Origin: Octopus sinensis
Lineage: Eukaryota
NCBI RefSeq assembly: GCF_006345805.1
Contig: NC_043002.1
Span: forward strand, 4,092,001 to 4,156,000
Direction of reading: 5' to 3'
Length of the DNA: 64,000 nt
Shown: positions 13,197 to 63,879 of the stretch, piece after piece
Layout of the letters: the number at the start of each line of letters is the position of its first letter
How positions within the stretch are numbered: position 1 is the first letter of the stretch
The notes under the pieces: generated by a model
Databases searched by the model: none
Told to the model about the DNA's origin: nothing
What the model saw: only the letters and a program-made list of their open reading frames with translations
Made by a program: the position numbers and the translations under genes

Positions 13197-13525
13197 TCAT
13201 CATCATCATCTTCATCATCTTCGTTTAGCGTCCACTTTCCATGCTAGCATGGGTTGGACGGTTCAACTGGGGTCTGGGAAGCCATGGAGGCTGCACCAGG
13301 CTCCAGTCTGATCTGGCAGTGTTTCTACAGCTGGATGCCCTTCCTAATGCCAACCACTCCATGAGTGTAGTGGGTGCTTTTTACGTTCCACTGGCACAGG
13401 TGCCAGGCGAGGCCGGCAAACGGCCACAATCGGATGGTGTTTTTAACGTGCCACCGGCATGGGGTCCAGGCGAGGCTGGCAACGGCCACAATCGGATGGT
13501 GCTTTTTACGTGCCACCGGCATGAA
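13197..13525 (-). mobile_element. SINE-like family C copy
   Basis: Reverse-complement family C body with a (CAT)n run at left. Confidence 0.85.
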
Positions 13526-16451: not shown

Positions 16452-16453
<2 letters not shown>

Positions 16454-17990: not shown

Positions 17991-18006
17991 ATAATAATAA
18001 TAATAA

Positions 18007-18534: not shown

Positions 18535-18535
<1 letters not shown>
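18007..18535. mobile_element. ~530-bp non-coding element bounded by (TAA)n on both sides
   Basis: Complex sequence with abrupt junctions into TAA arrays; no recognisable ORF. Confidence 0.55.
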
Positions 18536-18565
<30 letters not shown>

Positions 18566-18587
18566 TAATAATAATAATAATAATAAT

Positions 18588-31654: not shown

Positions 31655-32226
31655 AATCAAAAGCAAAATCAAAATCAAATTCGATGACTGGCGGCCGTGC
31701 TAGCAGGGTGCAAAGAGCAGCATACAAGCGTGATCATTGACAGAGCGGCTAACCGGCTTCCGTGCCAGTGGCACTTAAAAGGCACCATTCGAGCGTGATC
31801 GTTACCTGCGTTGCCTTACTGGCACTTGTACCTGTGCTAGTAGGGTGCCAAGAGCACCATCCGAGCGTGATCGTTGCCAGAGTAGCCAACTGGCTTCCGT
31901 GCCAGTGGCACGTAAAAGGGCACCATTTGAGCGTGATCGTTACCAGCATCGCCTTACTGGTACCTGTGCTGGTGGCATGTGTAAAAGATTCGAGTGAGGT
32001 CTTTGCCAATATCGCCTGACTGGCCCTGTGCCAGTGGCACGTAAAAAGTACCCACTACACTCACAGAGTAGTTGGCGTTAGGAAGGGCATCCAGCTGTAG
32101 AAACTCTGCCAGATCAAGATTGGAGCCTGGTGCAGCCATCTGGTTTGCCAGCCCACAGTCAATATTGTCCAATCCATGCTAGCATGGAAAGCGGACATTA
32201 AACGATGATGATGATGATGATGATGA

Positions 32227-32230
<4 letters not shown>
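31655..32230 (+). mobile_element. SINE-like family C copy (long)
   Basis: Family C body and (GAT)n tail. Confidence 0.85.
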
Positions 32231-32272
<42 letters not shown>

Positions 32273-32400
32273 TATATATATAATATATATGTATATATAG
32301 TTAATCCAAACACTAAAACACAAAAAGAAAATACAACAACGCAAGGACGTGGAACAAATATAATATTATTGGATGCTCAGGAAAGAAGGGAAGAAGGAGG

Positions 32401-32435
32401 GTTTTACGTTTCGAGTGGAGCTCTTCGTCAGAAAC
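32401..32435 (-). ncRNA. Minimal type-I hammerhead ribozyme motif (Penelope-type)
   Basis: Minus RNA: GUUU-CUGACGA-A-GAG cucca CUC-GAAA-CG-UA-AAAC. Intact CUGANGA and GAAA core, stem I 4 bp, stem II 3 bp, palindromic ACGU in place of stem III, GUA cleavage triplet. Confidence 0.75.
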
Positions 32436-32529
32436 ATAGGAAAAGGAAAGATCCAAAGAAGGGAAGATGGAGGGAAACAATCGCCAACGGTACACACGCG
32501 GTCACATACATATATATATATATAGTTGG

Positions 32530-32680
32530 ACTTCATAAAAAAACAAAAGTCGAAGACAGGTGTGTAAGCAACAAACAGATGTATTAGTTTAATGCTTGGG
32601 AAATGGGAAAGTCTTTTATGTTTCAGCAGAAAGGAACACAGAAATAAACAGAGAGAGAAAATAAAAAGAGGGAGAAAATA
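32530..32680 (-). mobile_element. Penelope-like terminal-repeat remnant with hammerhead stem II deleted
   Basis: Reverse-complement homolog of 30380-30540; reads CTTTCTGCTGA|AACATAAAAGAC, lacking the stem II segment. Confidence 0.6.
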
Positions 32681-32682
32681 TA

Positions 32683-32716
<34 letters not shown>

Positions 32717-33014
32717 AGAAAATGAAGAGGAGAGTGGAGACTTATTCACATCCAAAACTTTTTATCTAAAATGTTTTCTACATATTTTTAATAAAAAGTT
32801 TTGGATGTGAATAAATCTCCACTCTCCTCTTCATTTTCAATTGTAGACTCTACGGAATGTTTGCAGTTCTGAACAGGAACAAGGACCTATTCCAACAAAC
32901 AAGTACCAATATCTACTTATATTTGAGTACTATGTAATTCGAGTGTTGCAGATAGCCTGCATCAATACCATTTTATGAGATAATTGAGTATCTGAGAGGA
33001 TAATTTAACCCTTT

Positions 33015-33056
<42 letters not shown>

Positions 33057-33098
33057 CCATTTCAATATGGCTACCCCTAAGGGTGGATGCTACTGTAG

Positions 33099-33148
<50 letters not shown>

Positions 33149-33269
33149 AAGTATATATGGAAGTATATGGAAGTATATATATATATGGAAGTATGCTGTG
33201 TGTGAGAAGACCCGGCAAGACCAGTGAGAACAATCAAAATCAAAACATATATCAGAAAGCAGGGGTTAA

Positions 33270-34055
33270 GTGACCCATCCGTTCGTGTCCGCTGACAGCC
33301 TCGTCTGGCACCCGTGCCGGTGATACGTAAAAGCACCATTCGCTCGTGGCCGTTTGCCAGCTCTGCCTGGCCCCGTGTCGGTGGCACGTAAAAGCACCAT
33401 CCGTTCGTGTTCGTTGCCAGCCTCGCCTGGCCCCGTGCCAGTGACACGTAAAAGCACCGTCCGTTCGTGGCCGTTTGCCAGCTCTGTCTGGCCCCGTGTC
33501 GGTGGCACGTAAAAGCACCATCCGTTCGTGGCCGTTTGCCAGCTCTGTCTGGCCCCGTGTCGGTGGCACGTAAAAGCACCATCCGTTCGTGTCCGTTGCC
33601 AGCCTTGGCTGGCCCCCGTGCCGGTGACACGTAAAAACACCGTCCGCTCGTGGCCGTTTGCCAGCTCTGTCTGGCAACCGTGTCGGTGACACGTAAAAGC
33701 ACCGTCCGTTCGTGGCCGGTTGCCAGCTCTGTCTGGCCCCGTGTCGGTGGCACGTAAATGCACCATCCGTTCGTGTCCGTTGCCAGCATCGCCTGGCCCC
33801 GTGCCGGTGACACGTAAAAGCACCATCCGTTCATGGCCGTTCGCCAGCTCTGTCTGGCACCTGTGCAGGTGGCACGTAAAAAACACCACTACACTCGCGG
33901 AGTGGTTGGCGTTAGGAAGGGCATCCAGCCGTAGAAACACTGCCAGATCTGACTGGGCCTGACGAAGCCTTCCAGCTTCACAGACCCCAGTTGACCCGTC
34001 CAACCCATGCTAGCATGGAAAGCGGACGCTAAACGATGATGATGATGATGATGAT
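33270..34055 (+). mobile_element. Family C SINE with expanded internal ~59-bp tandem repeat (~10 units)
   Basis: Repeated GCACCATCCGTTCGTGGCCGTTTGCCAGCTCTGTCTGGCCCCGTGTCGGTGGCACGTAAAA followed by the family C tail. Confidence 0.88.
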
Positions 34056-42287: not shown

Positions 42288-42771
42288 TCTTTATATATAA
42301 AAGTCAAGTTGTGTGTCTGTCTCCTACGATTTAGATTCCTAACTACTCCCACATTTTGCGGTGCAGTTTAACCAAATCTTATAGTTGTGATTCATATCGA
42401 GCCCTTCTGGGTATTAGCGCACGTCTACGACGAGTCTACGATTTAAAAAAAAATTTACCATAATTTTTTTCCATTTTAATGCATTTTTTTGCTATTATAT
42501 AAGGGAAGTAACTCTCTAAAAATGTCTACGATGAGTCAACGATTTAAAAAAAAATTTACCATAATTTTTTTCCATTTTAATGCATTTTTTCGCTATTATA
42601 TAAGGGAAGTAACTCTCTAAAAATGTCTACGATGAGTCAACGATTTAAAAAAAAAAAAATTTACCATCATTTCTTTTCCATTTTTAATGCATTTTTTTGC
42701 TACAACTCTCTAAAAATGTTTATATAGTTATTTCCCTTACAAACCCGAGCAATGCCGGGCAATACTGCTAG
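42288..42771 (+). mobile_element. Non-autonomous Helitron with internal ~103-bp tandem triplication
   Basis: A|TC 5' end (TCTTTATATATAAAA), 3' CCCG..CGGG hairpin, CTAG|T end, no TSD. Confidence 0.88.
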
Positions 42772-43027: not shown

Positions 43028-43146
43028 GATGTATAATATAGCTAAACTCAAACAGTAAATGGTGACTGGTGTAGCTCTGATCAAAGATGTATAATATAGC
43101 TAAACTCAAACAGTAAATGGTGACTGGTGTAGCTCTGATCAAAGAT
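43028..43146. repeat. 58-bp tandem duplication
   Basis: GATGTATAATATAGCTAAACTC... at 43028 and 43086. Confidence 0.9.
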
Positions 43147-44005: not shown

Positions 44006-44395
44006 AGGCGTAGGAGTGGCTGTGTGGTAAGTAGCTTGCTAACCAACCACATGGTTCTGGGTTCAGTCCCACTGCGTGGCACCTTGGGCAAGTGTCTTCT
44101 ACTATAGCCTCGGGCCGACCAAAGCCTTGTGAGTGGATTTGGTAGACGGAAACTGAAAGAAGCCTGTCGTATATATGTATATATATATGTATGCGTGTGT
44201 GTTTGTCCCCCTAGCATTGCTTGACAACCAATGGTGGTGTGTTTACGTCCCCGTCACTTAGCGGTTCGGCAGAAGTGACTGATAGAATAAGTACTAGGCT
44301 TACAAAGAATAAATCCCAGGGTCGATTTGCTCGATTAAAGGCTGTGCTCCAGCATGGCCGCAGTCAAATGACTGAAACAAGTAAAAGAGTAAGAG
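44006..44395 (+). mobile_element. Family B SINE, full length
   Basis: tRNA-like head (TGGTAAG; GGTTCAGTCCC), core and AAGAGT tail. Confidence 0.9.
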
Positions 44396-44902
44396 TTCTT
44401 TGATTATGCCTTGTATCTTTTTTGAAGCAGCTCTCGAGAGTGAAATCCAAATATAAGAAAATTGAACTTTTTACCATATTCCATGCTGGAAATGGAAAAT
44501 GGACTTTGTTCCTACATCATCAGGAATGCAGCAAGTGACTTGTCCATTGGAATGAAATAAGCTGCTACTCTCAATATGTTCTGCATAGAAGGAGGGTGAG
44601 TAGGGTCAGCTTCATGCTAAAGGATGAGGGGATTGAAGCAGGAGTGGGGTTCAGTAGAAATGCAATGAAGAATGATTCATGGTTTTCCAAGTTCTTGTTA
44701 AACCATTTAATATCCAATTCAACTGACACACTTTGGATCAACAGACAGGCCTTGAGTCATGGATATTGGAGCTGAAAAATAGATGAATAATTACTAACCC
44801 GCATTCTTCACAGAAGCATTTGCCACGAATGGGTTGGGTTTGCTTCAGTAATTATTTGCGAATGGAGCATGACACAAAAAGGCTTCTTTGTACTTGCTAC
44901 TT

Positions 44903-45235
44903 ACTCTTTTACTTGTTTCAGTCATTTGACTGTGGCCATGCTGGAGCACTGCCTTTAGTCGAGCAAATCGACCCCGGGACTTATTCTATCGGTCTCTTTT
45001 GCCGAACTGCTAAGTTATGGGGACGTAAACACACAAGCATCGGTTGTCAAGCAATGCTAGGGGGACAAACACAGACACACACACATATATACGGTGGGCT
45101 TGTCTACCAAATCCACTCACAAGGCTTTGGTCGGCCCGAAGCTATAGAAGACACTTGCCCAAGGTGCCACACAGTGGGACTGAACCCAGAACCATGTGGT
45201 TGGTAAGCTAGCTACTTACCACACTGCCACTCCTA
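44903..45235 (-). mobile_element. Family B SINE
   Basis: Reverse-complement family B body. Confidence 0.88.
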
Positions 45236-47095: not shown

Positions 47096-49218
47096 AATAT
47101 CTCTGAAAGGAGCAAAAGAAAATCAAATCCTCTGGTTTTATTGAGATCTGAACTCTATACACATTAGGTTCCAAAGACTAAATTAGAACAGTTTAAAAAT
47201 GAATCGAAATAGAAAGGAACCAGAGCAGTAAACCAACGACTTTTTCCATCCTGAAAATGTTTGTAAAACAAGGTTGCAATAAGATGATTCCCCTTCATTT
47301 GTTGCTTGACATACCTGTTCAATTGTTTTGCATTATTTTATGAAACAGGTAAATTTATTTGTCATTTGGTATGTGGATGTGACTTTTCTAATCTAATTTT
47401 GTTATTGACTTGCTGCAGAAACCCCTTTGGCCTCCTATGCGAGCACAAAGAATATTTAAATAACCCAAATCTTTTCACACTGCTGTTAATCCCATAAATT
47501 AAGATGCAATTTGTTCTGATGAAGATAGAAAAAAAAATGACCGAAAAAGTGTCTTGGTCTAAAGATCAATAATGCTATTTTCCCTGCAACAAAGGCATAT
47601 TTTTTAAAATATAATCATCACTACAAAAGACTGACACATCAAACATGCATATAGAATATAAAATATGATTTTTAAATCCTCATGATTATATGATGAACAT
47701 TTATTCAATATTTACAATATATAGTTTAAAAAAAAAATTTTTTAAAAGTAATTTTGTTGGTTTTGAAGAACTTTTATTCATTTCTTCTACAGAGTGTATA
47801 GAATTCTGGTCCAGTAGAAAATTCCTCATGTGTGTCATCACCATGAAGATCTTGTATATTTGGAATTATATCAAGCACTTGAGAATGCCTCAAATAATAG
47901 TTTTAAATGGATGCTCAATACCATCATCTGCTGTCAGTTTTGAACCTGTGGTTTGGGGGAAAAAAGAAGAAAAATGTATAAGATATATACATGAAAAGGA
48001 AACTTCTGTTGGCTCCAGACTTTCATTACATGTTACATTCAGAAGAGGAGCAAATATAATTAGAATACAAGTCATAACTGTGGCAGAAACAGGATGAATA
48101 TTCTATTGAATTCCTTTTTAGAAATATCTATAATGCATTTGGACTGCTAGACTTTTCACTTGTACTTTCAGCCAAGCCATTGACAGTTCACATTTCTTTT
48201 TACTAAACAGTAAAGTAAATTAGACAAAACATGCAACACAAAGCAATAGATCTAAAGAATGTACGGCAATTAAGAGCACATCCATATCATTAGACTATGA
48301 ACTCACTAAAGAGACGGGGATATCACCACAATTACTGCAAAATCAGTATTAAATCTAATGCAAGAGTCAACAAGAATTTATTCAATGCATCAACAACTTT
48401 TGCTCGAGACCCAAACTCTACACTATGAGAAACAAGAAAAAGGATTAGAGATTAATCTTAGGCCAAGTAATGCCAAAATTATTTCAGCTCCAACCCTAGA
48501 CAAAAAAAAAATACAACCCACACTATGCAAGACACTTTCCATCCAATAGCTCAACTTGTACAAAACACTGAACACAATTCAATAACCTTAACAGATTTTG
48601 TAAATTACAACTATTTCTGGATAGCAGACCATTGACAAAGCTAAGAGACTTAGATTCTTCATGTGCTGGGTGAAATAAAATAAAATCTGGACTCAAGTCT
48701 AAGAGCTGACAATTGCAATTATGTACTAAATCAGTTGTACCGTTTCCGCACAAAATTCAGACTGGGGCGGTATCATTGTCATCACTTTAGTACACTACCA
48801 AGATGAAGTATAAAACCTAACAGGGTTTCAAACAATTTTTAACAGAAACACATCTATTGGATTAACCCTTCTTGACACCCCTTGGGACCTCCTCCGGTAT
48901 GGCAACCTCCTTTTCATAAAGTTATCTGAAAAATCTCCCATCACAATTTCATGCTAAGTTTCATTCCTAACACCAGCTCTTTTACTAAATTCTTCCCTAT
49001 TTTAGCAGAAATATGGCAATGAATGGTTTAAAATCAACTCCTTGCCTCGTGCTAGTTTTATTAGGACTCAAGAAAGGTAAAAAGCAGAAACCAATGCCCA
49101 CCCACCACTACTTGACTAAAGAGACCAATAGAATAAATACCAAGCCTTAAAAAAAAAAAGGTACTGGGTTTCAAATCATTAGACTATGAACTCACTAAAC
49201 AGACTGGGATATCACCAC

Positions 49219-50535
49219 TGTAGCAATATCGTTTCCCCCATTGCTATCTTCACTGTATTAAGAATAATCTTGTTCGAGATTACAAACATCTTCAGCTAGT
49301 TTAATGTTTGTTGTAAACACTAATCCGATTGGTTGACACGTGACGCGATTTGTCTCTACTTAGTTCGCACCACTGGTTGACATGTGACACGACTGGTCTC
49401 TGCACGGTTCGCACCGCTGGTTGCCACGTGACGCGATTTGTCTCCACTTATTTCCGCGCCATTGTTCCAAACAGCCAATCACAGCTTTCCATTTCTGAAG
49501 TTCGTTTGAGCCACCTAACCTGTATATAAGAGAGTGTTTCTCAGACACTTTTCGTCTTAGGTTTCTAGTTCTTCTCAGAACTGACCCCTGACCACAGAGT
49601 TCGTCTTTGGCTTCTAGTCCTGGTGGGGACTAAACCTCTGACCACACAGAGCATACTCAAACATGTTCCAGTTCGAAAGGCAGGCGACCAACAAGCAAAA
49701 CTATCTACGAAGATTTAGCTTGTACCTAAGATGGCTACAGATTCAACTCATACGGTTAGTGTGAAAATCTCACCACGGAAAAACAGTTGCAGAATATCTA
49801 TATCAAGAGAAAACCAACCAAGCAGAATATATAATGAAGACGCTGCAAAAACCAAGCAGCAGACACAACGTCATCGCCAACATCGTCTCTATCTACGAAG
49901 ATTTAACCTGTACACAAGATAACTACAGATTCAACTCAAGCGGTTAGGTGAAAATCTCACCACGGGAAAACGGCTACAGTAAATATATCTGAAAGAATGT
50001 TCATATCAAGAGAAAGATAAACACAACAAGTGATTCAACTAATCTCAGCTCCGAGACACAACATCTTGATATTGAACTCTTACACTTCGTGTACCTCATA
50101 AACAGTAAATCAATTACCTGTCTTTAGTTTTAGTTCTTGTAAGAACTGGCTTCAGAGACAGCGCTGCTCAACCAAATGATATACAATTGTTCCTGCTACA
50201 ACTAGTTACGATGCTAAATGTACACTCAACACGAAGAGTCTACTATCTTTGCCGCCTCCACCATCAGGTACTTTTCTATGTCAATCACATTCACCTTTCG
50301 CTCTGTCACACTCAGAAACACACAGACACAAAACCTGCTAACGCTTACAAACTCCCAACATCAACACGATTGTAAGATAAATAAGGTTTATCGCAAAAGA
50401 GAAGACTAGTCGTCAATCCACTTATGTTTTATTGTTACTGCATGTATTGTACGGCATGTAACAACTCATTAAGAATGGGATCGCGTGCGATTGTATTCCC
50501 TATACGATACAACCGCATATGAACCTGTTCTTATA
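49219..50535 (+). mobile_element. Probable solo LTR, 1317 bp
   Basis: Interrupts a repeat unit with CCAC (or ACCAC) duplicated at both ends; starts TGTAG, ends TTATA (not canonical CA); CCAAT and TATATAAG near 49480-49530; internal ~190-bp direct repeat; no ORF. Confidence 0.7.
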
Positions 50536-51110
50536 CCACAATTACTGCCAAATCAGTATTAAATCTAATGCAAGAGTCAACAAGAATTTATTCAATGCAT
50601 CAACAATTTTTGCTGATGACCCAAACTCTACACTATGAGAAACAAGAAAAAGGATTAGAGATTAATCTTAGGCCAAGTAATGCCAAAATTATTTCAGCTC
50701 CAACCCTAGACAAAAAAAAAATACAACCCACACTATGCAAGACACTTTCCATCCAATAGCTCAACTTGTACAAAACACTGAACACAATTCAATAACCTTA
50801 ACAGATTTTGTAAATTAAAACTATTTCTGGATAGCAGACCAATGACAAAGCTAAGAGACTTAGATTCTTCATGTGCTGGGTGAAATAAAATATAATCTGG
50901 ACTCAAGTCTAAGAGCTGACAATTGCAATTATGTACTAAATCAGTTGTACCGTTTCCGCACAAAATTCAGACTGGGGCGGTATCATTGTCATCACTTTAG
51001 TACACTACCAAGATGAAGTATAAAACCTAACAGGGTTTCAAACAATTTTTAACACAAACGCATCTATTGGATGAACCCTTCTTGACACCACTTGGGACCT
51101 CCTCCAGTAT

Positions 51111-51495
51111 ACTCTTACTCCTTTACTTGTTTCAGTTATTTGACTGCGGCCATGCTGGAGCACTGCCTTTAGTCGAGCAAATCGACCCCGGGACTTATTC
51201 TTTGTAAGCCCAGTACTTATTCTATCGGTCTCTTTTGCCGAATCGCTAATTCACGGCGACGGAAACACACCAGCATCGGTTGTCAAGCAATGCTAGAGGG
51301 AAAAAACAGACACACAAACTTATATATATACGATAGGCTTCTTTCAGTTTCTGTCTACCAAATCCACTCACAAGGCATTGGTCGGCCCGGGGCTATAGCA
51401 GAAGACACTTGCCCAAGATGCCACGCAGTGGGACTGAACCCGGAACTATGTGGTTGGTTAGCAAGCTACTTACTACACAGCCACTCCTGCGCCTC
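51111..51495 (-). mobile_element. Family B SINE inserted in array copy 2
   Basis: Full reverse-complement family B body interrupting CCTCCRGTAT|..CAACCTCC. Confidence 0.9.
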
Positions 51496-53019
51496 TGTCA
51501 ACCTCCTTTTCTCAAAAGTTATCTGAAAAATCTCCCATCACAATTTCATGGTAAGTTTCATTCCTAACACCAACTCTTTTACTAAATTCTTCCCTACTTC
51601 AGTAGAAATATGGCAATGAAAGGGTCAAATCAACTCCTTGCCTCCTGCTAGTTTTATTAGGACTCAAGAAAAGTGAAAAGCAGAAATCAATCTTGACAGG
51701 ACTTATCAGATGGGCAGAAACCAATGCCCATGGGCATGGCTGTGTAGTTCAGAGTTCAGTCCCACTGTGTGGCACCATGGGAAAATGTCTTCTAGCCTTG
51801 GGTTGACCAAAGCCTTATGAGTACACTTGGTAGACAGAAACTGAAAGAAGTCCATTGTACCTTTGTTCGTCCACTCACCACCACTTGACAAAAGAGACCA
51901 ATAGAATAAATACCAAGCCTTAAAAAAAAAAAAAGTTCTGGGTTCAAATCATTAGACTATGAACTCACTAAAGAGACTGGGATATCACCACAATTACTGC
52001 AAAATCAGTATTAAATCTAATGCAAGAGTCAACAAGAATTTATTCAATGCATCAACAACTTTTGCTCAAGACCCAAACTCTACACTATGAGAAACAAGAA
52101 AAAGGATTAGAGATTAATCTTAGGCCAAGTAATGCCAAAATTATTTCAGCTCCAACCCTAGACAAAAAAAAAATACAACCCACACTATGCAAGACACTTT
52201 CCATCCAATAGCTCAACTTGTACAAAACACTGAACACAATTCAATAACCGTAACAGATTTTGTAAATTAAAACTATTTCTGGATAGCAGACCAATGACAA
52301 AGCTAAGAGACTTAGATTCTTCATGTGCTGGGTGAAATAAAATAAAATCTGGACTCAAGTCTAAGAGCTGACAATTGCAATTATGTACTAAATCAGTTGT
52401 ACCGTTTCCGCACAAAATTCAGACTGGGGCGGTATCATTGTCATCACTTTAGTACACTACCAAGATGAAGTATAAAACCTAACAGGGTTTCAAACAATTT
52501 TTAACACAAGCACATTTATTGGATTAACCCTTCTTGACACCACTTGGGACCTCCTTCAGTATTGCAACCTCCTTTTCATAAAGTTATCTGAAAAATCTCC
52601 CATCAGTTTCATTCCTAACACCAGCTCTTTTACTAAATTCTCCCCTATTTCAGTAGAAATATGGCAATGAAATGGTTAAATCAACTCCTTGCCTCGTGCT
52701 AGTTTTATTAGGACTCAAGAACGGTGAAAAGCAGAAATCAATGCCCGTGGGCATGGCTGTGTAGTTAGAAGTGTAGTTCAGAGTTCAGTCCCACTGTGTG
52801 GCACCACGGGCAAATGTCTTCTCCAAGCCTTATGAGTAGACTTGGTAGACAGAAACTGAAAGAAGTCCAGTGTGCCTTTGTTCGTCCACTCACCACTACT
52901 TGACTAAAGAGACCAATAGAATAAATACCAAGCCTTAAAAAAAAAAGTACTGGGTTTCAAATCATTAGACTATGAACTCACTAAAGAGACTGGGATATCA
53001 CCACAATTACTGCCAAATC

Positions 53020-54437
53020 TGGCAACGGGTGTCATACCTGCGGACTGAAGAACAGCGATAATGTGCCCAATTTTCAAGAAAGGGAGCCGCGAAGACCCGC
53101 TTAACTACCGACCGGTTTCCCGGACATCAACAATCAGCAAGATGTTCGAAACCATCCTTAAAAAAGGTATGATGCTCCACCTCCAAAACACAGTCTATCT
53201 CTGATTCCCAACACGGCTTCGTGCCGAAGTGATCATGCTTGACCCAACTCACTGGTAATGGAAGAATTGGTGACGCGCATCCTCGATGATAGTGATGCTG
53301 TTGACATCGTTTTATTGGACTTTGCCAAAGCTTTTGACTCGGTAAACCACCACCTATTACTTGTCAAGCTCCAAGCATATAGTTTCCATCCAGATATTGC
53401 ACGATGGGTTGGAGCCTTCCTCCCAGATCGCTCCTTCCAAGTCCAAGTTAATGGTTCCCAGTCCGACGTCTCCAGTGCGAGCCTCAAGGTTCAGTGCTTG
53501 GGCCCTTATTGTTCTTAGTCTTCATAAATGACTTGCCCAACGACCTCACGCAACACACCCTTCTATTTGCCTACGATGTCAAACTGGTCGCTCCTCGCGG
53601 TGATATAGAGGATCTTCGTCGATGCCTCCACCAAATTTGGAGGTGGTCTAACGAATGGGACCTGTGTCTGAATGTGTCAAAGTGCTGTCATCTGCCTGTT
53701 GGCTCTCCTCCTGCAACTCAACTTGATTTCGAGCCGGGTCGTCTGCTGCTGGAGAGGACCAATCAGGTAAAGGACCTGGGTATCTTGGTGGAGTCCTCCT
53801 TTACACCTTCAACCCAGTGCGCTCATGCTGCCAACAAAGCATGCGGAATTCTGTTCTTGATTCGACGGTCAATCGGAATGCTCACAGCAGCCATATTCCT
53901 ACCACTCTATGTCACGCTGGTGAGACCCATATTGGAGTACGGGATTCAAGCCTCTTCTCCTTATCTCCTCAAAGACATAAAGCATCTCGAAAGAGTCCAG
54001 AAGCTGGCTACCCGAATGGCTCTTGGTCTCAAGAATTTGTCTTATGAAGAAAGGCTGAAGACGCTCGACCTTTATTCTCTAGAAAAACGCCGCCGCCGTG
54101 GTGATCTCATTCTTGCTCACATCATAAGCGGAAAGTGTAACCTCTCGAAAGAGCTGTTCTTCACTCCTGCTCCAGAGCTTCGGCTGCGGGGTTATTCCGA
54201 AAAGCTCTATCTGCGACGATTTCATCTCAATCGAAGGAGAGGGGCTTTCTCCGTCCGGGTTGCGGATCCGTGGAATAAGCTGCCAGACAAGATGGTGAAG
54301 ATGCCGACGACCGCTCAGTTCAGTTCAAAGTCTCCCTTGACCTCAAGTGGCCTGAACACTTTACATGAACACCACCCTGTACATAACTCCATGTCCCCCT
54401 ACATGGCTTTGCTTTTTGAGCCAAAAAATTAACTAAC
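53020..54437 (+). mobile_element. 5'-truncated CR1-clade LINE (RT domain, frameshifted, catalytic FADD changed to FAYD)
   Basis: GVIPAD..PIFKKG..NYRPVS; LDFAKAFDSVNH; GPLLFLVFIND; FAYDVK; RPILEYG; RRRRGDLI; LRGYSEKL..FSVRVADPWNKLP; 3' hairpin CCATGT/ACATGG and (ACTA)n tail. Confidence 0.93.
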
Positions 54438-54918
54438 TAATGCAAGAGTCAACAAGAATTTATTCAATGCATCAACAACTTTTGCTCAAGACCCAAACTC
54501 TACACTATGAGAAACAAGAAAAAGGATTAGAGATTAATCTTAGGCCAAGTAATGTCAAAATTATTTCAGCTCCAACCCTAGACAAAAAAAAAATACAACC
54601 CACACTATGCAAGACACTTTCCATCCAATAGCTCAACTTGTACAAAACACTGAACACAATTCAATAACCTTAACAGATTTTATAAATTACAACTATTTCT
54701 GGATAGCAGACCAATGACAAAGCTAAGAGACTTAGATTCTTCATGTGCTGGGTGAAATAAAATATAATCTGGACTCAAGTCTAAGAGCTGACAATTGCAA
54801 TTATGTACTAAATCAGTTGTACCGTTTCCGCACAAAATTCAGACTGGGGCGGTATCATTGTCATCACTTTAGTACACTACTAAGATGCTAAACTGATCAG
54901 AGAGCATTTGTAGTTTAA

Positions 54919-55640
54919 CCCTTTCGTTACCAAACCGCCCAAACCCACCCGTATTTACCTATTCATATTTAAATGAGAATATCAGTGCAAATCTCTTTAG
55001 TACATTCGTGAAAACACGTGATGATACTTCGTAAACACTTCATTTACGGTTTTGTACAACGATCGATGTGTAATTTTAATTCCGTGAATTTTGGGAGATT
55101 TTTTCCGAAATTTGTTCCTTTTGTGTTTTCAAAATTTGTAATTCTGACAAAAAATGGATACGAATTTCATTATATCAAGAAGCGAGTCAGAATTCGAAGG
55201 ATTTTCTACTGAAGACCTTGATAAATCTAACTATGACTAAAAAAAAAAAAAAGCATGTGGTATTTGATAATGAATCTGATGCTTCGTTTTCCATAAGTGA
55301 AAACAGTGAATCCGAGAGCTCCGACAGCGATAAAGAAAATGAATTGGCACCTGAATGGAGTGAAAATTTAAAAACTGTCTCTTTCGGTGATTTTTCTGAA
55401 GAAACTGGACCAAGCCACAGACTTTCCCAGGAGAGTAAAGCCTTAGACCATTTCTTTTTACTTTTTCGAATGTGCCTATTTGAAATCATTACGGCAGAAA
55501 CAAACGGTTACGCTAAACGTAAACAAAGCGAAAGAAACGATAGTTTGTGGTTTCCCACAACCTTAAATGAAATTAAGACTATTTTGCCATAAATATTATT
55601 ATGGGTATCAGAAAGTTACCCAGAATAACAAATTCTATTG
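54919..55640 (+). mobile_element. piggyBac left end with frameshifted transposase N-terminus (3'-truncated)
   Basis: TTAA-CCCTTTCGTTAC (same TIR as the 46082 MITE); MDTNFIISRSESEFEGFS; FSEETGPS..ALDHFFLLF..EIITAETNGYA..WFPTTLNEIK-(fs)-FAINIIMGIRKLP. Confidence 0.92.
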
Positions 55641-57570
55641 TATTTTGTTGTATACCCAATTGAATATTAGCTAATAACCCATTTTCTATAGCAATGTTTG
55701 AACAAAATTTTAATAATTTTATATTTTGTTGAATTTACCTGTATCTACCTGCAATTAGAGTCACTTTGTGACAAAAATTATAGTATAGAATTGGTTGAGA
55801 ACATTTCATTAAATTATCTTCCAAAAATCACATTAATATATTGATAAATAAAAAAGTAATAGTTGTTTAATGAAACAAGACTAAATTTATGATTACATTA
55901 GAAATTAATTGAAACACATAAAATCTGGACTCAAGTCTAAGAGCTGACAATTGCAATTATGTACTAAATCAGTTGTACCGTTTCCGCACAAAATTCAGAC
56001 TGGGGCGGTATCATTGTCATCACCTTAGTACACTACCAAGATGAAGTATAAAACCTAACAGGGTTTCAAACAATTTTTAACAGAAACACATCTATTGGAT
56101 GAACCCTTCTTGACACCACTTGGGACCTCCTCCGGTATGGCAACCTCCTTTTCATAAAGTTATCTGAAAAATCTGCCATCACAATTTCATGGTAAGTTTC
56201 ATTCCTAACACCAGCTCTTTTACTAAATTCTTCCCTACTTCAGTAGAAATATGGCAATGAAAGGGTTAAATCAACTCCTTGCCTCGTGCTAGTTTTATTA
56301 GGACTCAAGAAAGGTGAAAAGCAGAAATCAATCTTGATAGGACTTATCAGAGGGGCAGAAACCAATGCCCGCGGGCATGGCTGTGTAGTTAGAAGTGTAG
56401 TTCAGAGTTCAGTCCCACTTGTATAATACACTTAACAGATTTTGTAAATTACAACTATTTCTGGATAGCAGACCATTGACAAAGCTAAGAGATTTAGATT
56501 CTTCATGTGCTGGGTGAAATAAAATAAAATCTGGACTCAAGTCTAAGAGCTGACAATTGCAATTATGTACTAAATCAGTTGTACCGTTTCCGCACAAAAT
56601 TCAGACTGGGGCGGTATCATTGTCATCACTTTAGTACACTACCAAGATGAAGTATAAAACCTAACAGGGTTTCAAACAATTTTTAACAGAAACACATCTA
56701 TTGGATTAACCCTTCTTGACACCCCTTGGGACCTCCTCCGGTATGGCAACCTCCTTTTCATAAAGTTATCTGAAAAATCTCCCATCACAATTTCATGCTA
56801 AGTTTCATTCCTAACACCAGCTCTTTTACTAAATTCTTCCCTATTTTAGCAGAAATATGGCAATGAATGGTTTAAAATCAACTCCTTGCCTCGTGCTAGT
56901 TTTATTAGGATTCAAGAAAGGTAAAAAGCAGAAACCAATGCCCACCCACCACTACTTGACTAAAGAGACCAATAGAATAAATACCAAGCCTTAAAAAAAA
57001 AAAGGTACTGGGTTTCAAATCATTAGACTATGAACTCACTAAAGAGACGGGGATATCACCACAATTACTGCAAAATCAGTATTAAATCTAATGCAAGAGT
57101 CAACAAGAATTTATTCAATGCATCAACAACTTTTGCTCAAGACCCAAACTCTACACTATGAGAAACAAGAAAAAGGATTAGAGATTAATCTTAGGCCAAG
57201 TAATGCCAAAATTATTTCAGCTCCAACCCTAGACAAAAAAAAAATACAACCCACACTATGCAAGACACTTTCCATTCAATAGCTCAACTTGTACAAAACA
57301 CTGAACACAATTCAATAACCGTAACAGATTTTGTAAATTAAAACTATGTCTGGATAGCAGACCATTGACAAAGCTAAGAGACTTAGATTCTTCATGTGCT
57401 GGGTGAAATAAAATATAATCTGGACTCAAGTCTAAGAGCTGACAATTGCAATTATGTACTAAATCAGTTGTACCGTTTCCGCACAAAATTCAGACTGGGG
57501 CGGTATCATTGTCATCACCTTAGTACACTACCAAGATGCTAAATTTGATTAGAGAACATTTGCAGTTTAA

Positions 57571-58155
57571 CCCCTTAATTTTGGTTCATAATAAAAATCC
57601 GACCGTGAGAACCTGTTGTTATCTAAATGTAAATTTGAACCCAAATCTCGTTGGCACATTCGTTAAAACATGTGATTTCACATCGTAAACAGTTAAGTTA
57701 TAGTATCCGACATTGCTTGAAGTGATATCTCAACTCAGTGAATTTTGGGAGATTTTTTCCACATTCTTTTCGGCATCGATTTTTCTTCAACTTTGAAAAT
57801 GGATAGGAGTTTCATGTTATCAAGCATTGATTCTGAATTTAAAGCTTTTTCAAAGGAAAATAGGGAGATATCGAGAAAAAGAACGAAATAGGTACTAAAG
57901 CACGTTGTGTACAAAATAATGAATGATATTTTTTTATCCGAAAATGAAAGCAGCGCCTTCCGAAGAAACAAAGCGGCGATGGCGACAGCAACATCGGAAT
58001 GAAGTAAAAAAAACTTCAGACATGTTTTTATTAGCAATTTTTCTGGGGAGATAGTTTATCTATAGTTTTTCTTAGGAAGCGAAACCGTTAGACTTTTATT
58101 TTTTTTCAGTATGCTAGTTTGAAGCGATCACTTCGGAAACAAATTTACAGGAAAA
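57571..58155 (+). mobile_element. Second, strongly diverged piggyBac-like left end and transposase N-terminus
   Basis: TTAA-CCC start; shared islands with the 54919 element (CAAATCTC..ACATTCGT.AAAACA.GTGAT; GTGAATTTTGGGAGATTTTTTCC); MDRSFMLSSIDSEFKAFS..HVV..FEAITSETN; stops. Confidence 0.8.
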
Positions 58156-58611
58156 AAGACTACACTATACAAGACACTTTCCATCCAAGTCTAAGAGCTG
58201 ACAATTGCAATTATGTACTAAATCAGTTGTACCGTTTCCGCACAAAATTCAGACTGGGGCGGTATCATTGTCATCACTTTAGTACACTACCAAGATGAAG
58301 TATAAAACCTAACAGGGTTTTTAAAGAGACCAATAGAATAAATACCAAGCCTTAAAGTACTGGGTTCAATACATTCAACTAAAATTCAAAGCAATGTCAC
58401 AGAATGGTTGCACTTCAATGACTGAAACAAGTAAAAGAAGAAAGACAAGCGTTTACTAAAATCACTTAAATCGATTCAGTCACAGAATTCAGACTGGGGC
58501 GAAACCTTATTCATCACAATTAGTCCATTAATTGCCAACTATCCAATATTAGGGTATTTTGAAACCAAAAACTGTCACTACTGTAATATAAAAAGAAATA
58601 GTTTCATACAT

Positions 58612-58975
58612 ACTCTCTTTTACTTGTTTCAGCCATTTGACTGCGGCCATGCTGGAGCACCGCCTTTAGTCGAGCAAATCGACCACGGGATTTATTCTTT
58701 TGTAAGCCCAGTACTTATTCTATCTGACTCTTCTGCCGAACCGCTAAGCTACGGGGACGCAAGCACACGAGCATCGGTTGTCAAGCAATGCTAGGGGGAC
58801 AAACAGACACACTAACACATATATATATATACGACAGGCATCTTTCAGTTTCCGTCTACCAAATCCACTCACAAGGCATTGGTCGGCCTGGGGCTATAGC
58901 AGAAGACACTTGCCCAAGATGCCACGCAATGGGACTGAACCCGGAACCATGTGGTTGGTTAGCAAGCTACTTACC
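58612..58975 (-). mobile_element. Family B SINE
   Basis: Reverse-complement family B body. Confidence 0.88.
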
Positions 58976-59254
58976 ACGTCTAAAATATACAAAGCACTAA
59001 CTCCAAATTGTTCAGAACTGCACATACAAAAGCCATCCTTCCATCTCTAATCTTTCTAAGCTAGTCCAGTTTGCCCTCTTCACCATCTCATCATTTTAGC
59101 CCCTGCAAGTCAAACATGACTACACTCATATAGCCTAAGGGCAGTTTGCCCCATAACTCTCATAAAAATACAAATCTCTTTTATGAAATTTTCCAGTGAA
59201 GAGGATAAGAATTGGGCAGACTTTACTAAATGCATGTTTGCATGAAATTTACCA

Positions 59255-59650
59255 GGCACAGGAGTGGCTGTGTGGTAAGTAGCTTGCAAACCAACCACAT
59301 GGTTCCGGGTTCAGTCCCACTGCATGGCATCTTGGGCAAGTGTCTTCTGCTATAGCCCCAGGCCGACCAATGCCTTGTGAGTGGATTTGGTAGACGGAAA
59401 CTGAAAGAAGCCTGTCGTATATATATGTATGTGTGTGTATGTGTTTGTCCCCCCTAGCATTGCTTGACAACCGATGCTGGTGTGTTTACGTCCCCGTCAC
59501 TTAGTGGTTCGGCAAGATAGACCGATAGAATAAGTACTGAGCTTACAAAAGAATAAGTCCCGGGGTCGATTCGCTCGACTCAAGGCGGTGCTCTAGCATG
59601 GCCGCAGTCAAATGACTGAAACAAGTCAAAGAGCAAAAAGAGAGCAAAGA
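59255..59650 (+). mobile_element. Family B SINE, full length
   Basis: Head, core and tail as at 44006. Confidence 0.9.
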
Positions 59651-62020: not shown

Positions 62021-62349
62021 AGATCAAGAGCATATGCGTCATTTATATCTGTACCAAATAATTTCTTAGGAAAATGCGCCTCTTACAATAAAAAAATTGT
62101 ACAGCTCTTTGACTCATTCCTGTACAATAGCATAAAGTTGGATTTTACTCAAGGTTTCAATACATTTAACTTAGCAAAAACATTGTATGCAACATTTCTT
62201 GAAGAATGAACCAATAATCTCCCTCAACCTTCCAAAGGAGCCTTTATTTACAAAGCTACAACAAAACCTGAAAAGACTTCTAAAAGTACTCCCTATTACA
62301 AGGTGAACGCACCTGACCAAATACTATTAAACAGCTGATTCCTTTAACT

Positions 62350-63530
62350 GAAAAACCAACAGTCACTATAAATAATAGAACCTTGACAGATGTGGTGTCT
62401 GATTAACGGATAAGGGTTGAAGCATCGTGTCTTTCCCCTTAGCCACACTCCAATGACAGGTATCAAAAAATAATTTTTCCATTCCCGGAAATTTTCACTG
62501 TGGTTGATGCGGAAGTGGGTATAGATGAGATTTCCAAGAGAGTTATATGCAACCCAAGAATCGCTATATACTACGGACCCTTGGCGTATATATCGGGTAA
62601 TTAAGGGGATCAGTGTGGCGGCATCTCGCCTTTCCTCTTCACCACTCAGATGAAAGAGGTATGAAAACTTTTTTTTTGCCTACTCGCTCTATCCCAGTTT
62701 TTGTGAGTCTTCCACGATTGTATTTTCTTCCTACAATAACTGTTTCATCAATCCCTACTTCAACTCCTGGTCCACCAATTAAGGTCCTGGTAATTTTCAA
62801 CCCAATGCTGACAAACCTCGGAGCAGAAGGATCGCCAATCAATTGAGGTTGGATACAAAATGTTTAAATTTTCCATGACTAATGCATGCGACCAACAGTC
62901 TGTAAGGAAGTAGTTTACAAATAACAGGACTTTACAGGAAGGGATTCGCCGATTTACTAATGACATTGAAGCATTAGATTTCTTTCGAAAACATGTCATT
63001 CCCAGCACAGTTGACTGCCCTAGATGCACTCCACGAAAATACAAGCATCTTCCGATGTGGAAGGACTGTTCGCCGTCGAAGGCAAAGGCCAACGCAATGT
63101 GGATATTCTATATCCCTATACAACACTTTTTTGGAAGGAATTTTCGACCCAATGAAGGTAAACTTCACAACAGAAAGATCACCAATCAACAGACATGGCA
63201 AGCGTTATGTCTAAATTTCCCATAACAGATTTATGTGACCAACCTTGTGTTAGGAAATGATTGATAAATAAAGGAACTCTCCACGGAGGTAGACGGCTTC
63301 ACTCCAAAAAGTGTTCTTGAAGATAGACACAGACACTGAAAACCCGCATTTTGTTTTCCTTTGTTTCCAACAACGAACCATCTTCCTACATCGAAACATA
63401 TTAGTCCCATTTCGAGTAACACAAGGGGAATTACATGTTGGCGGAAAAATTGTAATGCCAAGTCATCTTTAAATCGAAATCTATAAGCCCCATCATACAA
63501 ACTTAAATCACAGGCAGTGCAAGATACCAT
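62350..63530 (-). pseudogene. Scrambled Merlin transposase fragments (at least three paralogs; one segment inverted)
   Basis: IDWRSFCSEVC, IGGPGVEVGIDET..RKYNRGR, RRDAATLIPLI..GSVVYSDSWVAY..NHSENF; paralogs HDASTLI..GSIIYSDCW and FFRQHVIP..VDW*SFCCEV; plus-strand FFRKHVIP..CPRC..TFLEG at 62950-63138. Confidence 0.9.
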
Positions 63531-63879
63531 CCTGATTTAGTGCTAGCTAAAAGGAATTGGTGCTAATTAAAGTGCTCGTGTCAATGATCAGATCAAATAA
63601 TATTACCATTCAGAAAAGGTCTTGCTTCATTGGTCAGCTGAAGTACCAGAGGTGATACAAAACTAATAACTTTTGAAAATATTTTCGTACCAATCGTATA
63701 CGATTTCTGTTTCACTCCTGTGACCAGGTGTTGGGGTTTACTGCTCGGATTCTGTACGGTTGATCGTGGGAATTTTCTGAAACCCCGCCAGTGCGCATTT
63801 TTTCATCATATTCCTTTAATATACGATGCATTACAACTGTTACACATTTTCGTTTCCACTTTTTGCTGCCGGGTGCGGA

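What the first reader, a model, noticed from the sequence alone, without database searches (positions are those of the whole stretch)
48286..58370. Young ~0.9-kb tandem array interrupted by five mobile elements of four classes
Seen: ~8 near-identical units (a few percent divergence by eye) are interrupted by a solo LTR (unit nt 44), a CR1 LINE (nt 59), two piggyBac-like ends (both nt 520) and a SINE (nt ~615). The LTR, CR1 and SINE are each private to one unit. Units fall into short-tail (copies 1, 6) and long-tail (2, 3, 5) types. Inference: the array either attracts or tolerates insertions at an unusual rate (a TE trap, possibly a piRNA-cluster-like locus), or is homogenised around older insertions by gene conversion. 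The unit has no conserved coding capacity that I can recognise.
Basis: partly seen in the sequence, partly recalled or inferred. Interest (0 to 1): 0.7.

Follow-up and report, generated by a model that had tools for sequence, protein, structure and literature searches.

The report
Tandem array of SNORD31 snoRNA genes
The ~0.9-kb repeat is not anonymous DNA: each unit carries, on the opposite strand, an intact copy of a conserved small nucleolar RNA gene (SNORD31, a guide for ribosomal RNA methylation), so this is a multi-copy snoRNA gene array with an ordinary load of transposons, not a transposon trap.

Summary
The repeat is real: five full or near-full and three partial units of 889 bp (about 1,015 bp in the long form) lie at 48283-58356.

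Every unit contains a minus-strand C/D-box snoRNA that scores above Rfam's curated threshold for SNORD31. There are eight copies, plus a ninth, degenerate copy at 58456-58523. Each array copy has canonical C, D' and D boxes, a 10-bp terminal stem, and a guide identical to the family consensus (target: 28S Gm4166 in human).

The array is probably not young:
- Two piggyBac-like fragments share one junction, 14 nt from the snoRNA, yet are only ~66% identical. The units beside them are ~98% identical.
- Unit variants are mosaic.
- The private SINE is as diverged as the other young SINE copies in the window.

This points to concerted evolution of an old array.

Private transposons make up 47% of the array, and it holds one young SINE in 10 kb. 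Neither figure exceeds the window or published octopus genome values, so the TE-trap reading is unsupported.

Most likely the snoRNAs are cut from introns of a repeated minus-strand host transcript, as with SNORD115/116. This is inferred, not shown.

The parts
48283..58445 (.). Whole tandem array: eight units plus the natural 3' end of the old SINE that closes the last unit.
   Evidence: The left flank below 48283 is unique sequence with no SINE similarity.
48283..49171 (.). Unit U1: complete, 889 bp, short tail.
49172..51944 (.). Unit U2: long tail, carrying the LTR-like insert and the young SINE.
51945..52957 (.). Unit U3: long tail, 1,013 bp, no private insertion.
52958..54887 (.). Unit U4a: unit nt 1-523, carrying the CR1-type LINE. 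It ends at the piggyBac junction.
55918..56424 (.). Unit U4b: unit nt 398 into the long tail. A roughly 500-bp deletion fuses it to U5.
56425..57015 (.). Unit U5: unit nt 299-889, short tail. It differs from U1 at 4 of 591 positions.
57016..57538 (.). Unit U6: unit nt 1-523. It ends at the second piggyBac junction.
58162..58356 (.). Unit U7: an internally deleted unit (nt 238-264, 412-546 and 835-869) that still holds the snoRNA.
48725..48791 (-). SNORD31-type C/D-box snoRNA, copy in U1.
   Evidence: Rfam RF00089, 44.3 bits against a gathering score of 40. It has C box GUGAUGA, guide UACCGCCCCAGU followed by D' CUGA, and D box CUGA. It has a 10-bp terminal stem.
50935..51001 (-). SNORD31-type snoRNA, copy in U2.
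   Evidence: 44.3 bits.
52387..52453 (-). SNORD31-type snoRNA, copy in U3.
   Evidence: 44.3 bits.
54807..54873 (-). SNORD31-type snoRNA, copy in U4a. Its 5' end is 14 nt from the PB1 junction.
55963..56032 (-). SNORD31-type snoRNA, copy in U4b. It has the stem variant A to G, which still pairs as G.U.
   Evidence: 43.0 bits.
56569..56635 (-). SNORD31-type snoRNA, copy in U5.
   Evidence: 44.3 bits.
57458..57527 (-). SNORD31-type snoRNA, copy in U6, with the same stem variant as U4b. It lies 11 nt (by the Rfam hit) from the PB2 junction.
   Evidence: 43.0 bits.
58217..58283 (-). SNORD31-type snoRNA, copy in U7.
   Evidence: 44.3 bits. The 135 bp around it are 100% identical to U1.
58456..58523 (-). 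Ninth, old SNORD31 paralogue just outside the array. Its D box reads GUGA, its guide is shortened, and no terminal stem is predicted. It is probably decaying.
   Evidence: Rfam 46.1 bits. Only the snoRNA aligns to the unit, at 75% over 77 bp; flank similarity is not significant. Fold result.
49219..50534 (+). Private 1,316-bp insertion in U2, possibly a solo LTR. The target duplication ACCAC lies at 49214-49218 and 50535-50539.
   Evidence: It contains a 44-bp x 2.8 tandem repeat and an internal ~110-bp repeat. No other copy is present in the window.
51111..51495 (-). Private young SINE in U2, full length, in the same sense as the snoRNA.
   Evidence: 90.8% identical to the copy at 59255-59650. 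It is 5.5% from a local young-subfamily consensus.
53020..54436 (+). Private 5'-truncated, frameshifted non-LTR retrotransposon (CR1-type RT) in U4a.
   Evidence: RVT_1 hits in two reading frames. Best named relatives are bird and Xenopus RTs at 39-49% identity.
54888..55917 (+). PB1: a 29-nt leader, a TTAA|CCC piggyBac-like 5' terminus, the start of a transposase ORF, then an AT-rich remainder.
   Evidence: Weak DDE_Tnp_1_7 match to profile positions 4-42, E = 0.08.
57539..58161 (+). PB2: a shorter homologue of PB1 with the same junction and leader.
   Evidence: 67.8% identity over 320 bp, E = 4e-23. Identity falls from 98% in the units to 93%, then 86%, then 66%.
51718..51958 (+). Old SINE copy (SINE nt 34-326) that forms the tail of one unit and the head of the next. 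The equivalent segment is in every unit; its head is deleted in the short-tail units.
58327..58445 (+). 3' part of the old SINE at the right edge of the array, running to the SINE's natural end.
48666..48690 (-). Candidate 3' splice site (uuuuauuuuauuucacccag|) 59 nt downstream of the snoRNA. It is repeated in U1, U2, U3, U4a, U5 and U6, and absent from U4b and U7.
   Evidence: Simple consensus scan. Prediction only.

Best explanation
The locus is a head-to-tail array of genes for one C/D-box small nucleolar RNA, an orthologue or paralogue group of SNORD31, read from the minus strand.

How it most likely works:
- Each unit supplies one ~70-nt snoRNA. Its C and D boxes are brought together by a 10-bp terminal stem.
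- Its guide, UACCGCCCCAGU, sits immediately upstream of the D' box. It would place the fifth-nucleotide rule on a G in the conserved large-subunit rRNA sequence ACUGGGGCGGUA. In human this site is 28S Gm4166.
- Most likely (inferred) the array is transcribed as one long Pol II host transcript, and each snoRNA is released from its own intron. A strong acceptor-like site lies 59 nt downstream of the snoRNA in six of the eight units.

How it most likely arose:
- The repeat unit arose by tandem duplication of a ~1-kb segment. That segment comprised the snoRNA, its flanks and an old SINE.
- The array has since been kept nearly uniform by unequal crossing-over and gene conversion.

The transposon insertions and deletions sit in spacer (intron) sequence. 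They are tolerated because only the ~70-nt snoRNA matters. Their density is that of the surrounding genome.

Shown: the repeat structure, the snoRNA features, the mosaic variants, and the old piggyBac junction. Inferred: transcription, intronic processing, methylation activity, and dosage as the reason for amplification.
For: - There are nine Rfam SNORD31 hits at or above the gathering score, all on the minus strand, one per unit. No other RNA family reaches threshold in the window.
- The alignment to the family model shows the C box, the 12-nt guide plus D', and the D box matching the conserved upper-case consensus.
- The same elements are invariant in an alignment with SNORD31 homologues from unrelated metagenomic eukaryote contigs.
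- A de novo box-and-stem scan of the whole window singles out exactly these eight copies, each with a 10-bp stem. Folding confirms the stem.
- The only variable position inside the snoRNA changes A-U to G.U in that stem.
- Between the array and the old ninth copy, only the snoRNA is still alignable.
- All three partial units (U4b, U5, U7) retain the snoRNA.
- Evidence for concerted evolution: the PB1/PB2 fragments have a Jukes-Cantor (JC) distance of ~0.44, against 11 differences in 513 positions for the units beside them; 22 of 237 site pairs are four-gamete incompatible; the private SINE is 5.5% from its consensus, like the other young copies.
- SNORD31 is an intronic snoRNA of SNHG1 that guides 28S Gm4166 (PMC13507652).
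- The transposon load is at background level.
Against: - There are no expression, processing or methylation data.
- Because the units are homogenised, the intactness of eight copies is not eight independent observations.
- Within the array, the snoRNA is not significantly less variable than the rest of the first 523 nt (1 variable column in 67, against about 20 in 456).
- The splice sites come from a crude consensus scan. The putative exon is the most variable part of the first half of the unit.
- U4b and U7 lack the predicted acceptor.
- PB1 and PB2 could have diverged by ectopic conversion from dispersed piggyBac copies rather than by age. However, the non-transposon leader is also more diverged (86%) than the units.
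Confidence: 0.72

Rival explanations
1. TE trap or piRNA-cluster-like locus. The array attracts or retains transposon insertions at an unusual rate and produces small RNAs against them.
For: - Four to five private insertions of several TE classes lie in 10 kb.
- Four of the five lie on the plus strand, antisense to the snoRNA strand.
- All five young SINE copies of the window lie at 44-60 kb and none at 1-38 kb. A regional preference for insertion is therefore possible.
Against: - Private TE content (47%) is within published genome-wide repeat fractions for octopuses, 43-66%.
- The array has one young SINE per 10 kb, while its immediate flanks have more. Any enrichment is regional, not a property of the array.
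- The two piggyBac pieces are one event.
- Each unit has an obvious non-TE function, the snoRNA.
- The array is 10 kb, small for a piRNA cluster. It is not built of nested TE fragments.
Confidence: 0.06
2. A functionless macrosatellite or segmental tandem duplication that merely happens to include a snoRNA (pseudo)gene. The snoRNA copies are uniform only because the whole unit is homogenised or recently amplified.
For: - The whole 889-bp unit, not just the snoRNA, is 96-99% identical between copies.
- Within the array the snoRNA shows no significant excess conservation.
- No expression data are available.
Against: - All boxes, the guide and the stem are intact in all eight copies, and the single substitution keeps pairing.
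- All three partial units (U4b, U5, U7) retain the snoRNA.
- The array copies look fitter than the adjacent ninth copy, which has lost its D box and stem. If there is no other SNORD31 locus, the array is then the likely working source of an otherwise conserved guide.
Confidence: 0.12
3. Functional snoRNA genes that are not intronic. Each unit is an independent transcription unit, or the array is a polycistronic precursor cut by endonucleases, as in plants, yeast and trypanosomes.
For: - A TATA-like UUUUAUAC lies about 20-25 nt upstream of the snoRNA stem (sequence).
- The putative exon is poorly conserved.
- U4b and U7 lack the predicted acceptor.
Against: - In U4a and U6 the piggyBac junction removes everything more than 14 nt upstream of the snoRNA, including the TATA-like motif. 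Both snoRNAs remain intact and homogenised.
- From general knowledge, animal rRNA-guide C/D snoRNAs are overwhelmingly intronic, and SNORD31 is intronic in SNHG1.
- An acceptor with a polypyrimidine tract lies 59 nt downstream of the snoRNA. This is close to the 60-90 nt typical of intronic C/D snoRNAs (the typical distance is from memory of Hirose and Steitz 2001).
Confidence: 0.12
4. Assembly artefact: a smaller array, or a single copy, inflated by mis-assembly of reads or haplotypes.
For: U1 and U5 differ at only 4 of 591 positions. No reads were available to check.
Against: Units differ by private insertions, private deletions and 85 variable columns arranged in distinct combinations. Artefactual duplication would not produce this.
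Confidence: 0.03

Closest known systems
SNORD31 (U31) in the vertebrate host gene SNHG1
   Same: It is the same RNA family by covariance model. It has the same box layout and an identical 12-nt guide plus D' box, so it is predicted to direct the same rRNA methylation, human 28S Gm4166.
   Different: In human it is a single copy in one intron of a host gene that carries seven other, different snoRNAs. Here there are eight near-identical copies in a homogeneous tandem repeat plus one old paralogue, and no other snoRNA family was detected within 64 kb.
SNORD115 / SNORD116 tandem arrays in SNHG14 (Prader-Willi locus)
   Same: These are head-to-tail repeats in which consecutive introns each yield one C/D snoRNA. 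Copy number is dynamic and non-allelic gene conversion shapes the repeat (PMC11608373 and PMC12429941). The architecture here is the same in outline: one snoRNA per ~1-kb unit, an acceptor-like site downstream, and mosaic variants.
   Different: SNORD115 and SNORD116 are orphan, eutherian-specific, imprinted snoRNAs present in 29-48 copies. The snoRNA here has a canonical, deeply conserved rRNA guide, is present in only eight copies, and is in a non-mammalian genome. Intronic organisation is not demonstrated here.
Small same-strand SNORD31 clusters in other eukaryotes (metagenomic contigs L076, L039, L078, L056)
   Same: They hold two to four SNORD31-like copies in the same orientation within 0.3-4.3 kb. 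This shows that local duplication of this snoRNA recurs.
   Different: Those paralogues are diverged from one another and irregularly spaced. They are not a homogenised 0.9-kb tandem repeat, and the organisms are unknown.
Concertedly evolving tandem RNA gene arrays (rDNA, 5S, U1/U2 snRNA arrays)
   Same: They show high within-array identity, mosaic variants, more diverged edge copies, and insertions tolerated in spacers.
   Different: Those arrays have tens to thousands of units, each with its own promoter. This one has eight units and probably depends on a host transcript.

Membership tests
SNORD31 (Rfam RF00089), C/D-box snoRNA | Covariance-model score at or above the curated gathering score (40 bits). 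| tested here: met
   Nine hits score 43.0-46.1 bits, with E-values of 3e-7 to 2e-6 for the whole window against all 4,227 families.
SNORD31 (Rfam RF00089), C/D-box snoRNA | C box RUGAUGA near the 5' end and D box CUGA near the 3' end, brought together by a terminal stem. | tested here: met
   All eight array copies have GUGAUGA and CUGA plus a 10-bp stem. The ninth copy has GUGA in place of the D box and no predicted stem, so it does not meet this feature.
SNORD31 (Rfam RF00089), C/D-box snoRNA | A family-specific guide immediately upstream of D', complementary to the 28S site methylated in human at Gm4166. | tested here: met
   The guide UACCGCCCCAGU plus CUGA is identical to the conserved consensus of the model. 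It is invariant in homologues from other eukaryotes. The target assignment comes from PMC13507652. Pairing to this organism's own 28S was not tested, because no rRNA sequence was at hand.
SNORD31 (Rfam RF00089), C/D-box snoRNA | A stable ~70-nt RNA bound by fibrillarin snoRNP proteins and required for the methylation. | not testable with these tools
   No expression or modification data are available.
Tandem intronic snoRNA host-gene array (SNORD115/116 type) | Head-to-tail repeat units, each with one snoRNA in the same orientation. | tested here: met
Tandem intronic snoRNA host-gene array (SNORD115/116 type) | Each snoRNA lies in an intron between non-coding exons of one long host transcript. 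| tested here: inconclusive
   An acceptor-like site lies 59 nt downstream of the snoRNA, and several donor-like sites follow it, in six of the eight units. There are no transcript data, and the putative exon is variable.
Tandem intronic snoRNA host-gene array (SNORD115/116 type) | An orphan snoRNA without an rRNA target; an imprinted, eutherian-specific locus. | tested here: not met
   The snoRNA has the canonical SNORD31 rRNA guide. The resemblance is one of architecture, not of membership.
piRNA cluster / TE trap | TE-fragment density clearly above the surrounding genome. | tested here: not met
   Private TE sequence is 47% of the array, against 43-66% genome-wide in octopuses. The array has one young SINE in 10 kb, against four in the ~6 kb of immediate flanks.
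piRNA cluster / TE trap | Abundant 24-31-nt small RNAs mapping to the locus. | not testable with these tools
   No small-RNA data are available.
piggyBac superfamily (the two 'ends') | A TTAA target duplication flanking terminal inverted repeats that begin with CCC, and a DDE_Tnp_1_7 transposase. | tested here: inconclusive
   TTAA|CCC is present at both 5' ends. No 3' end is present. The Pfam DDE_Tnp_1_7 match covers only profile positions 4-42 at E = 0.08, below threshold. The large protein database gave no hit.
Solo LTR | TG...CA termini, a 4-6-bp target duplication, and identity to the LTRs of a full element. | tested here: inconclusive
   A 5' TG and a 5-bp duplication ACCAC are present. 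The 3' end reads ...CTTAT, not CA. No related copy is in the window, and no TE library is available.

The most novel reading that the evidence does not exclude
This is a long-lived tandem amplification, tens of millions of years old, of a single housekeeping rRNA-methylation guide in a (probably cephalopod) invertebrate. It is organised like the mammalian SNORD115/116 arrays, with one snoRNA per repeated intron. It is kept uniform by gene conversion whose tracts stop at an ancient transposon junction about 14 nt from the snoRNA. That would imply selection on the dosage of one specific 2'-O-methylation guide. It would also provide a small, tractable natural system for measuring conversion-tract boundaries in a snoRNA array.
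Probability: 0.3. Interest if true: 0.55.

Novelty: new member of a known kind. Interest (0 to 1): 0.42.

Why it matters
It changes what the locus is. It is a multi-copy gene array for a deeply conserved ribosome-modification guide, not anonymous repeat DNA acting as a transposon sink.

Tandem, homogenised arrays of a canonical rRNA-guide snoRNA are unusual in animals. The well-known animal arrays (SNORD115/116, SNORD113/114) are orphan, imprinted and mammal-specific. An invertebrate example with a clear target would bear on two questions. The first is whether such arrays arise for dosage. The second is how concerted evolution works at this small scale. Here the units are about 98% identical while the transposon fragments embedded in them are about 66% identical, which gives a built-in clock.

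Practically, repeat-masking pipelines would probably mask this locus as a satellite and lose the snoRNA genes.

Tried and rejected
- Species identification with tools failed. The CR1 ORF's best hits were 39-49% identical, with bird, Xenopus and fluke names. A second LINE ORF gave only unnamed ENA hits and corals at 50-70%.
- An exact look-up of the CR1 ORF found nothing.
- A contig carrying a 71%-identical LINE protein (L121) has none of the window's SINEs, so it comes from another taxon.
- A literal search for a SINE sequence string in the paper library found nothing. 'Octopus' therefore rests only on my memory of the abundant octopus SINE.
- The piggyBac N-terminal ORF gave no hit in the large protein database and only a sub-threshold Pfam match.
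- I tested whether the left flank of the array is also SINE-derived, which would fit SINE-SINE recombination as the origin. It is not: the score equals the shuffle mean.
- I tested whether homology between the ninth copy and the unit extends beyond the snoRNA. It is not significant: 26 of 500 shuffles reach the score.
- An E-value-level Rfam scan of the whole window found no further snoRNA families. The many miRNA-model hits are far below gathering scores and sit on TG/TA microsatellites.
- There are no tRNA genes in the window.
- None of the 120 metagenomic loci with the guide motif shares anything with the window beyond the snoRNA core.
- TRF cannot see the array, because its period limit is 500 bp.

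Full report
**Observation**

- blastn of the first unit against the window, the direct-repeat families and a MAFFT alignment of the units with inserts removed define eight units between 48283 and 58356.
- U1 is a full 889-bp unit. U2 and U3 are full units of the long form, about 1,015 bp. U4a, U4b, U5, U6 and U7 are partial.
- Pairwise divergence between units is 0.7-4.3%.
  - a 1,316-bp element at 49219-50534, with a 5-bp target duplication ACCAC;
  - a full-length SINE at 51111-51495;
  - a 5'-truncated, frameshifted non-LTR retrotransposon at 53020-54436;
  - two piggyBac-like 5' fragments at 54888-55917 and 57539-58161, both joined to unit nt 523.
- TRF misses the array only because its period limit is 500 bp.

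- An Rfam scan at curated thresholds gives nine hits in the window. All are to SNORD31 (RF00089, C/D-box snoRNA), and all are on the minus strand.
- One hit lies in each of the eight units. The ninth lies at 58456-58523, just outside the array.
- A permissive E-value scan adds no other credible RNA family. The many miRNA-model hits are far below their gathering scores and sit on microsatellites.
- The model alignment shows, in every array copy, the C box GUGAUGA, the guide UACCGCCCCAGU directly followed by the D' box CUGA, and the D box CUGA. All match the conserved upper-case positions of the family consensus.
- A box-and-stem scan that I wrote picks out exactly these eight copies in the whole 64 kb, each closed by a 10-bp terminal stem. 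ViennaRNA predicts the same stem.
- The same boxes and guide are invariant when the octopus-like copies are aligned with SNORD31 homologues from unrelated eukaryotic contigs in metagenomes.
- SNORD31 is an intronic snoRNA of SNHG1 and guides 2'-O-methylation of human 28S G4166 (PMC13507652).
- By the fifth-nucleotide rule (established knowledge), the guide here selects a G in ACUGGGGCGGUA. That is consistent with this assignment.

**Anatomy of the unit and origin of the array**

- The tail of each unit and the head of the next together form an old, ~75%-identical copy of the window's abundant SINE, covering SINE nt 34-326.
The 'short tail' of U1 and U5 is a deletion of it.
- At the right edge, the old SINE runs on to its natural 3' end at 58445.
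- The left flank is unique sequence with no SINE similarity.
- The ancestral locus was therefore: left flank, ~700 bp containing the snoRNA, an old SINE, then the right flank. The repeat arose by a tandem duplication whose junction joins SINE nt ~313 to the unique sequence at ~48286.
- Ten nucleotides beyond the SINE end lies the ninth snoRNA copy.
- Only the ninth copy's snoRNA portion still aligns to the unit, at 75% over 77 bp. Similarity in the flank is not significant.
- The ninth copy's D box reads GUGA, and no terminal stem is predicted. It looks like an older paralogue in decay.

**The array is probably old and homogenised, not young**

There are three lines of evidence.

1. PB1 and PB2 are homologous over about 600 bp. 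This includes a 27-29-nt leader that precedes their TTAA|CCC terminus, and they join the unit at the same nucleotide. A single origin is therefore far more likely than two insertions.
   - They are only ~66% identical (Jukes-Cantor, JC, distance ~0.44). The units to their left differ at 11 of 513 positions.
   - Identity falls stepwise across the junction: 98% in the unit, 93% in its last 28 nt, 86% in the leader and 66% in the transposon.
2. The informative sites are mosaic. 22 of 237 site pairs show all four allele combinations.
3. The private SINE in U2 is 5.5% from a local consensus of the young subfamily. The other young copies in the window are 5.4-7.8% from it.
   - Two units separated since that insertion should then differ by roughly twice that amount, about 11%, instead of 1.5-4%.

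Unequal crossing-over and gene conversion among units explain all three observations.

If the octopus substitution calibration quoted in PMC13282606 applied, the PB1/PB2 split would be several tens of millions of years old. This depends on the taxon, which I could not verify.

An alternative for the first line of evidence is ectopic conversion of one piggyBac fragment by a dispersed copy. It is weakened because the non-transposon leader is also more diverged than the units.

**Transposon load**

- Private insertions occupy 4,771 of 10,074 bp (47%).
- Published repeat fractions for octopus genomes are 43-66%, with SINEs at 11.6%.
- The SINE family has at least 17 segments in the 64-kb window.
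- Of the five young full-length copies, one is in the array and four lie within about 4 kb of it on either side. None lies at 1-38 kb.
- Any enrichment is therefore regional, as might be expected around an actively transcribed locus. It is not a property of the array.

**How it most likely works**

- On the minus strand, 59 nt downstream of each snoRNA, lies uuuuauuuuauuucacccag|. This is a good polypyrimidine-tract acceptor. Donor-like sites follow it 80-145 nt further on.
- This spacing is close to the 60-90 nt between intronic C/D snoRNAs and their 3' splice sites in vertebrates (from memory of Hirose and Steitz 2001).
- In U4a and U6 the piggyBac junction replaces everything more than 14 nt upstream of the snoRNA, yet both copies stay intact. 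This argues against a unit-internal promoter.
- I therefore favour a minus-strand host transcript with one snoRNA per repeated intron. The closest analogue is the SNORD115/116 arrays of SNHG14, where consecutive introns each yield a snoRNA and non-allelic gene conversion shapes the repeat (PMC11608373 and PMC12429941).
- The resemblance is architectural only. Those snoRNAs are orphan, imprinted and eutherian-specific, whereas this one has a canonical rRNA guide.
- Transcription, splicing, snoRNP assembly and methylation are all inferred.

**Limits**

- The species could not be identified with the tools. 'Octopus' is my recollection of the SINE sequence.
- Because the units are homogenised, the intactness of eight copies is not independent evidence. 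Within the array the snoRNA is not significantly more conserved than its surroundings.
- The 'solo LTR' and 'piggyBac' labels remain unproven.
- No reads were available to exclude mis-assembly. The private insertions and distinct variant combinations make mis-assembly unlikely.

**Verdict**

- The TE-trap interpretation is not supported.
- The gene-conversion alternative is supported.
- The real identity of the locus is a tandem array of SNORD31-type snoRNA genes. That makes it a new member of a known kind, of moderate interest.

Noticed in passing
window 58380-58455 (minus strand): The antisense 3' end of the SINE reads cuugucuuucuucuuuuacuuguuucag| on the minus strand, a strong splice-acceptor-like sequence. 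It lies about 35-40 nt downstream of the ninth snoRNA copy. Every antisense copy of this SINE would carry the same motif, in the manner of Alu-style exonisation.
   Followed up: no
window 44012-44392, 44901-45234, 51111-51495, 58615-58977, 59255-59650: All five young copies of the SINE (5-8% from a local consensus) lie within 44-60 kb. The copies at 1-38 kb are all old (66-80% identical to the reference copy). This suggests a regional insertion preference around the array.
   Followed up: partly
L076 (metagenome contig Ga0210040_10018230), 614-4975: Four same-strand SNORD31-like paralogues lie within 4.3 kb in an unidentified eukaryote. L039, L078 and L056 have two each. Local duplication of this snoRNA recurs in other lineages.
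   Followed up: partly
window 16452-19208: Two copies of the C-terminal part of a LINE ORF2 (zf-RVT) lie at 17094-17786 and 18564-19208, with a 213-aa ORF upstream at 16452-17090. Relatives are at 50-70% identity, mostly on unnamed Mb-scale ENA contigs; the only named ones are corals.
   Followed up: partly
window 20396-21353 (minus): ORFs with a weak RNase H match (E = 0.01), next to the most GC-rich 2 kb of the window (48% GC). This is probably a retroelement fragment.
   Followed up: no
window 62347-63536 (minus): A fragment of an ISXO2/IS1595-like DDE transposase (PF12762, E = 4e-9), that is, a Merlin-type DNA transposon remnant.
   Followed up: no
window 10435-11511, 13229-13534, 31752-34009: A dispersed repeat family gives long stop-free frames on both strands with recurring peptide-like motifs (for example '...DLAVFLQLDALPNANHS...' and 'WCFLRAT.TGAR'). 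It is internally tandem at 32965-34009. Its nature was not determined.
   Followed up: no
window 5769-6905: Low-complexity tandem tracts: long homopolymer-codon runs and a ~21-bp repeat that encodes 'LGLTHPS' in one frame.
   Followed up: no
window 42423-42702 and 43028-43146: A 101-bp x 2.7 tandem repeat (93% matches) and a perfect 58-bp x 2.1 tandem repeat lie about 5 kb left of the array.
   Followed up: no
window 10432-10496 (minus) and 11549-11617 (plus): Two weak C/D-box-like candidates, each with RUGAUGA ... CUGA and a 5-bp terminal stem. Neither has Rfam support, and they are probably chance matches.
   Followed up: no
window 56400-56430: U4b is fused to U5 by a deletion of roughly 500 bp, running from the old SINE head to unit nt ~297. 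U7 has two internal deletions (unit nt 265-411 and 547-834). All three partial units (U4b, U5, U7) keep the snoRNA.
   Followed up: partly
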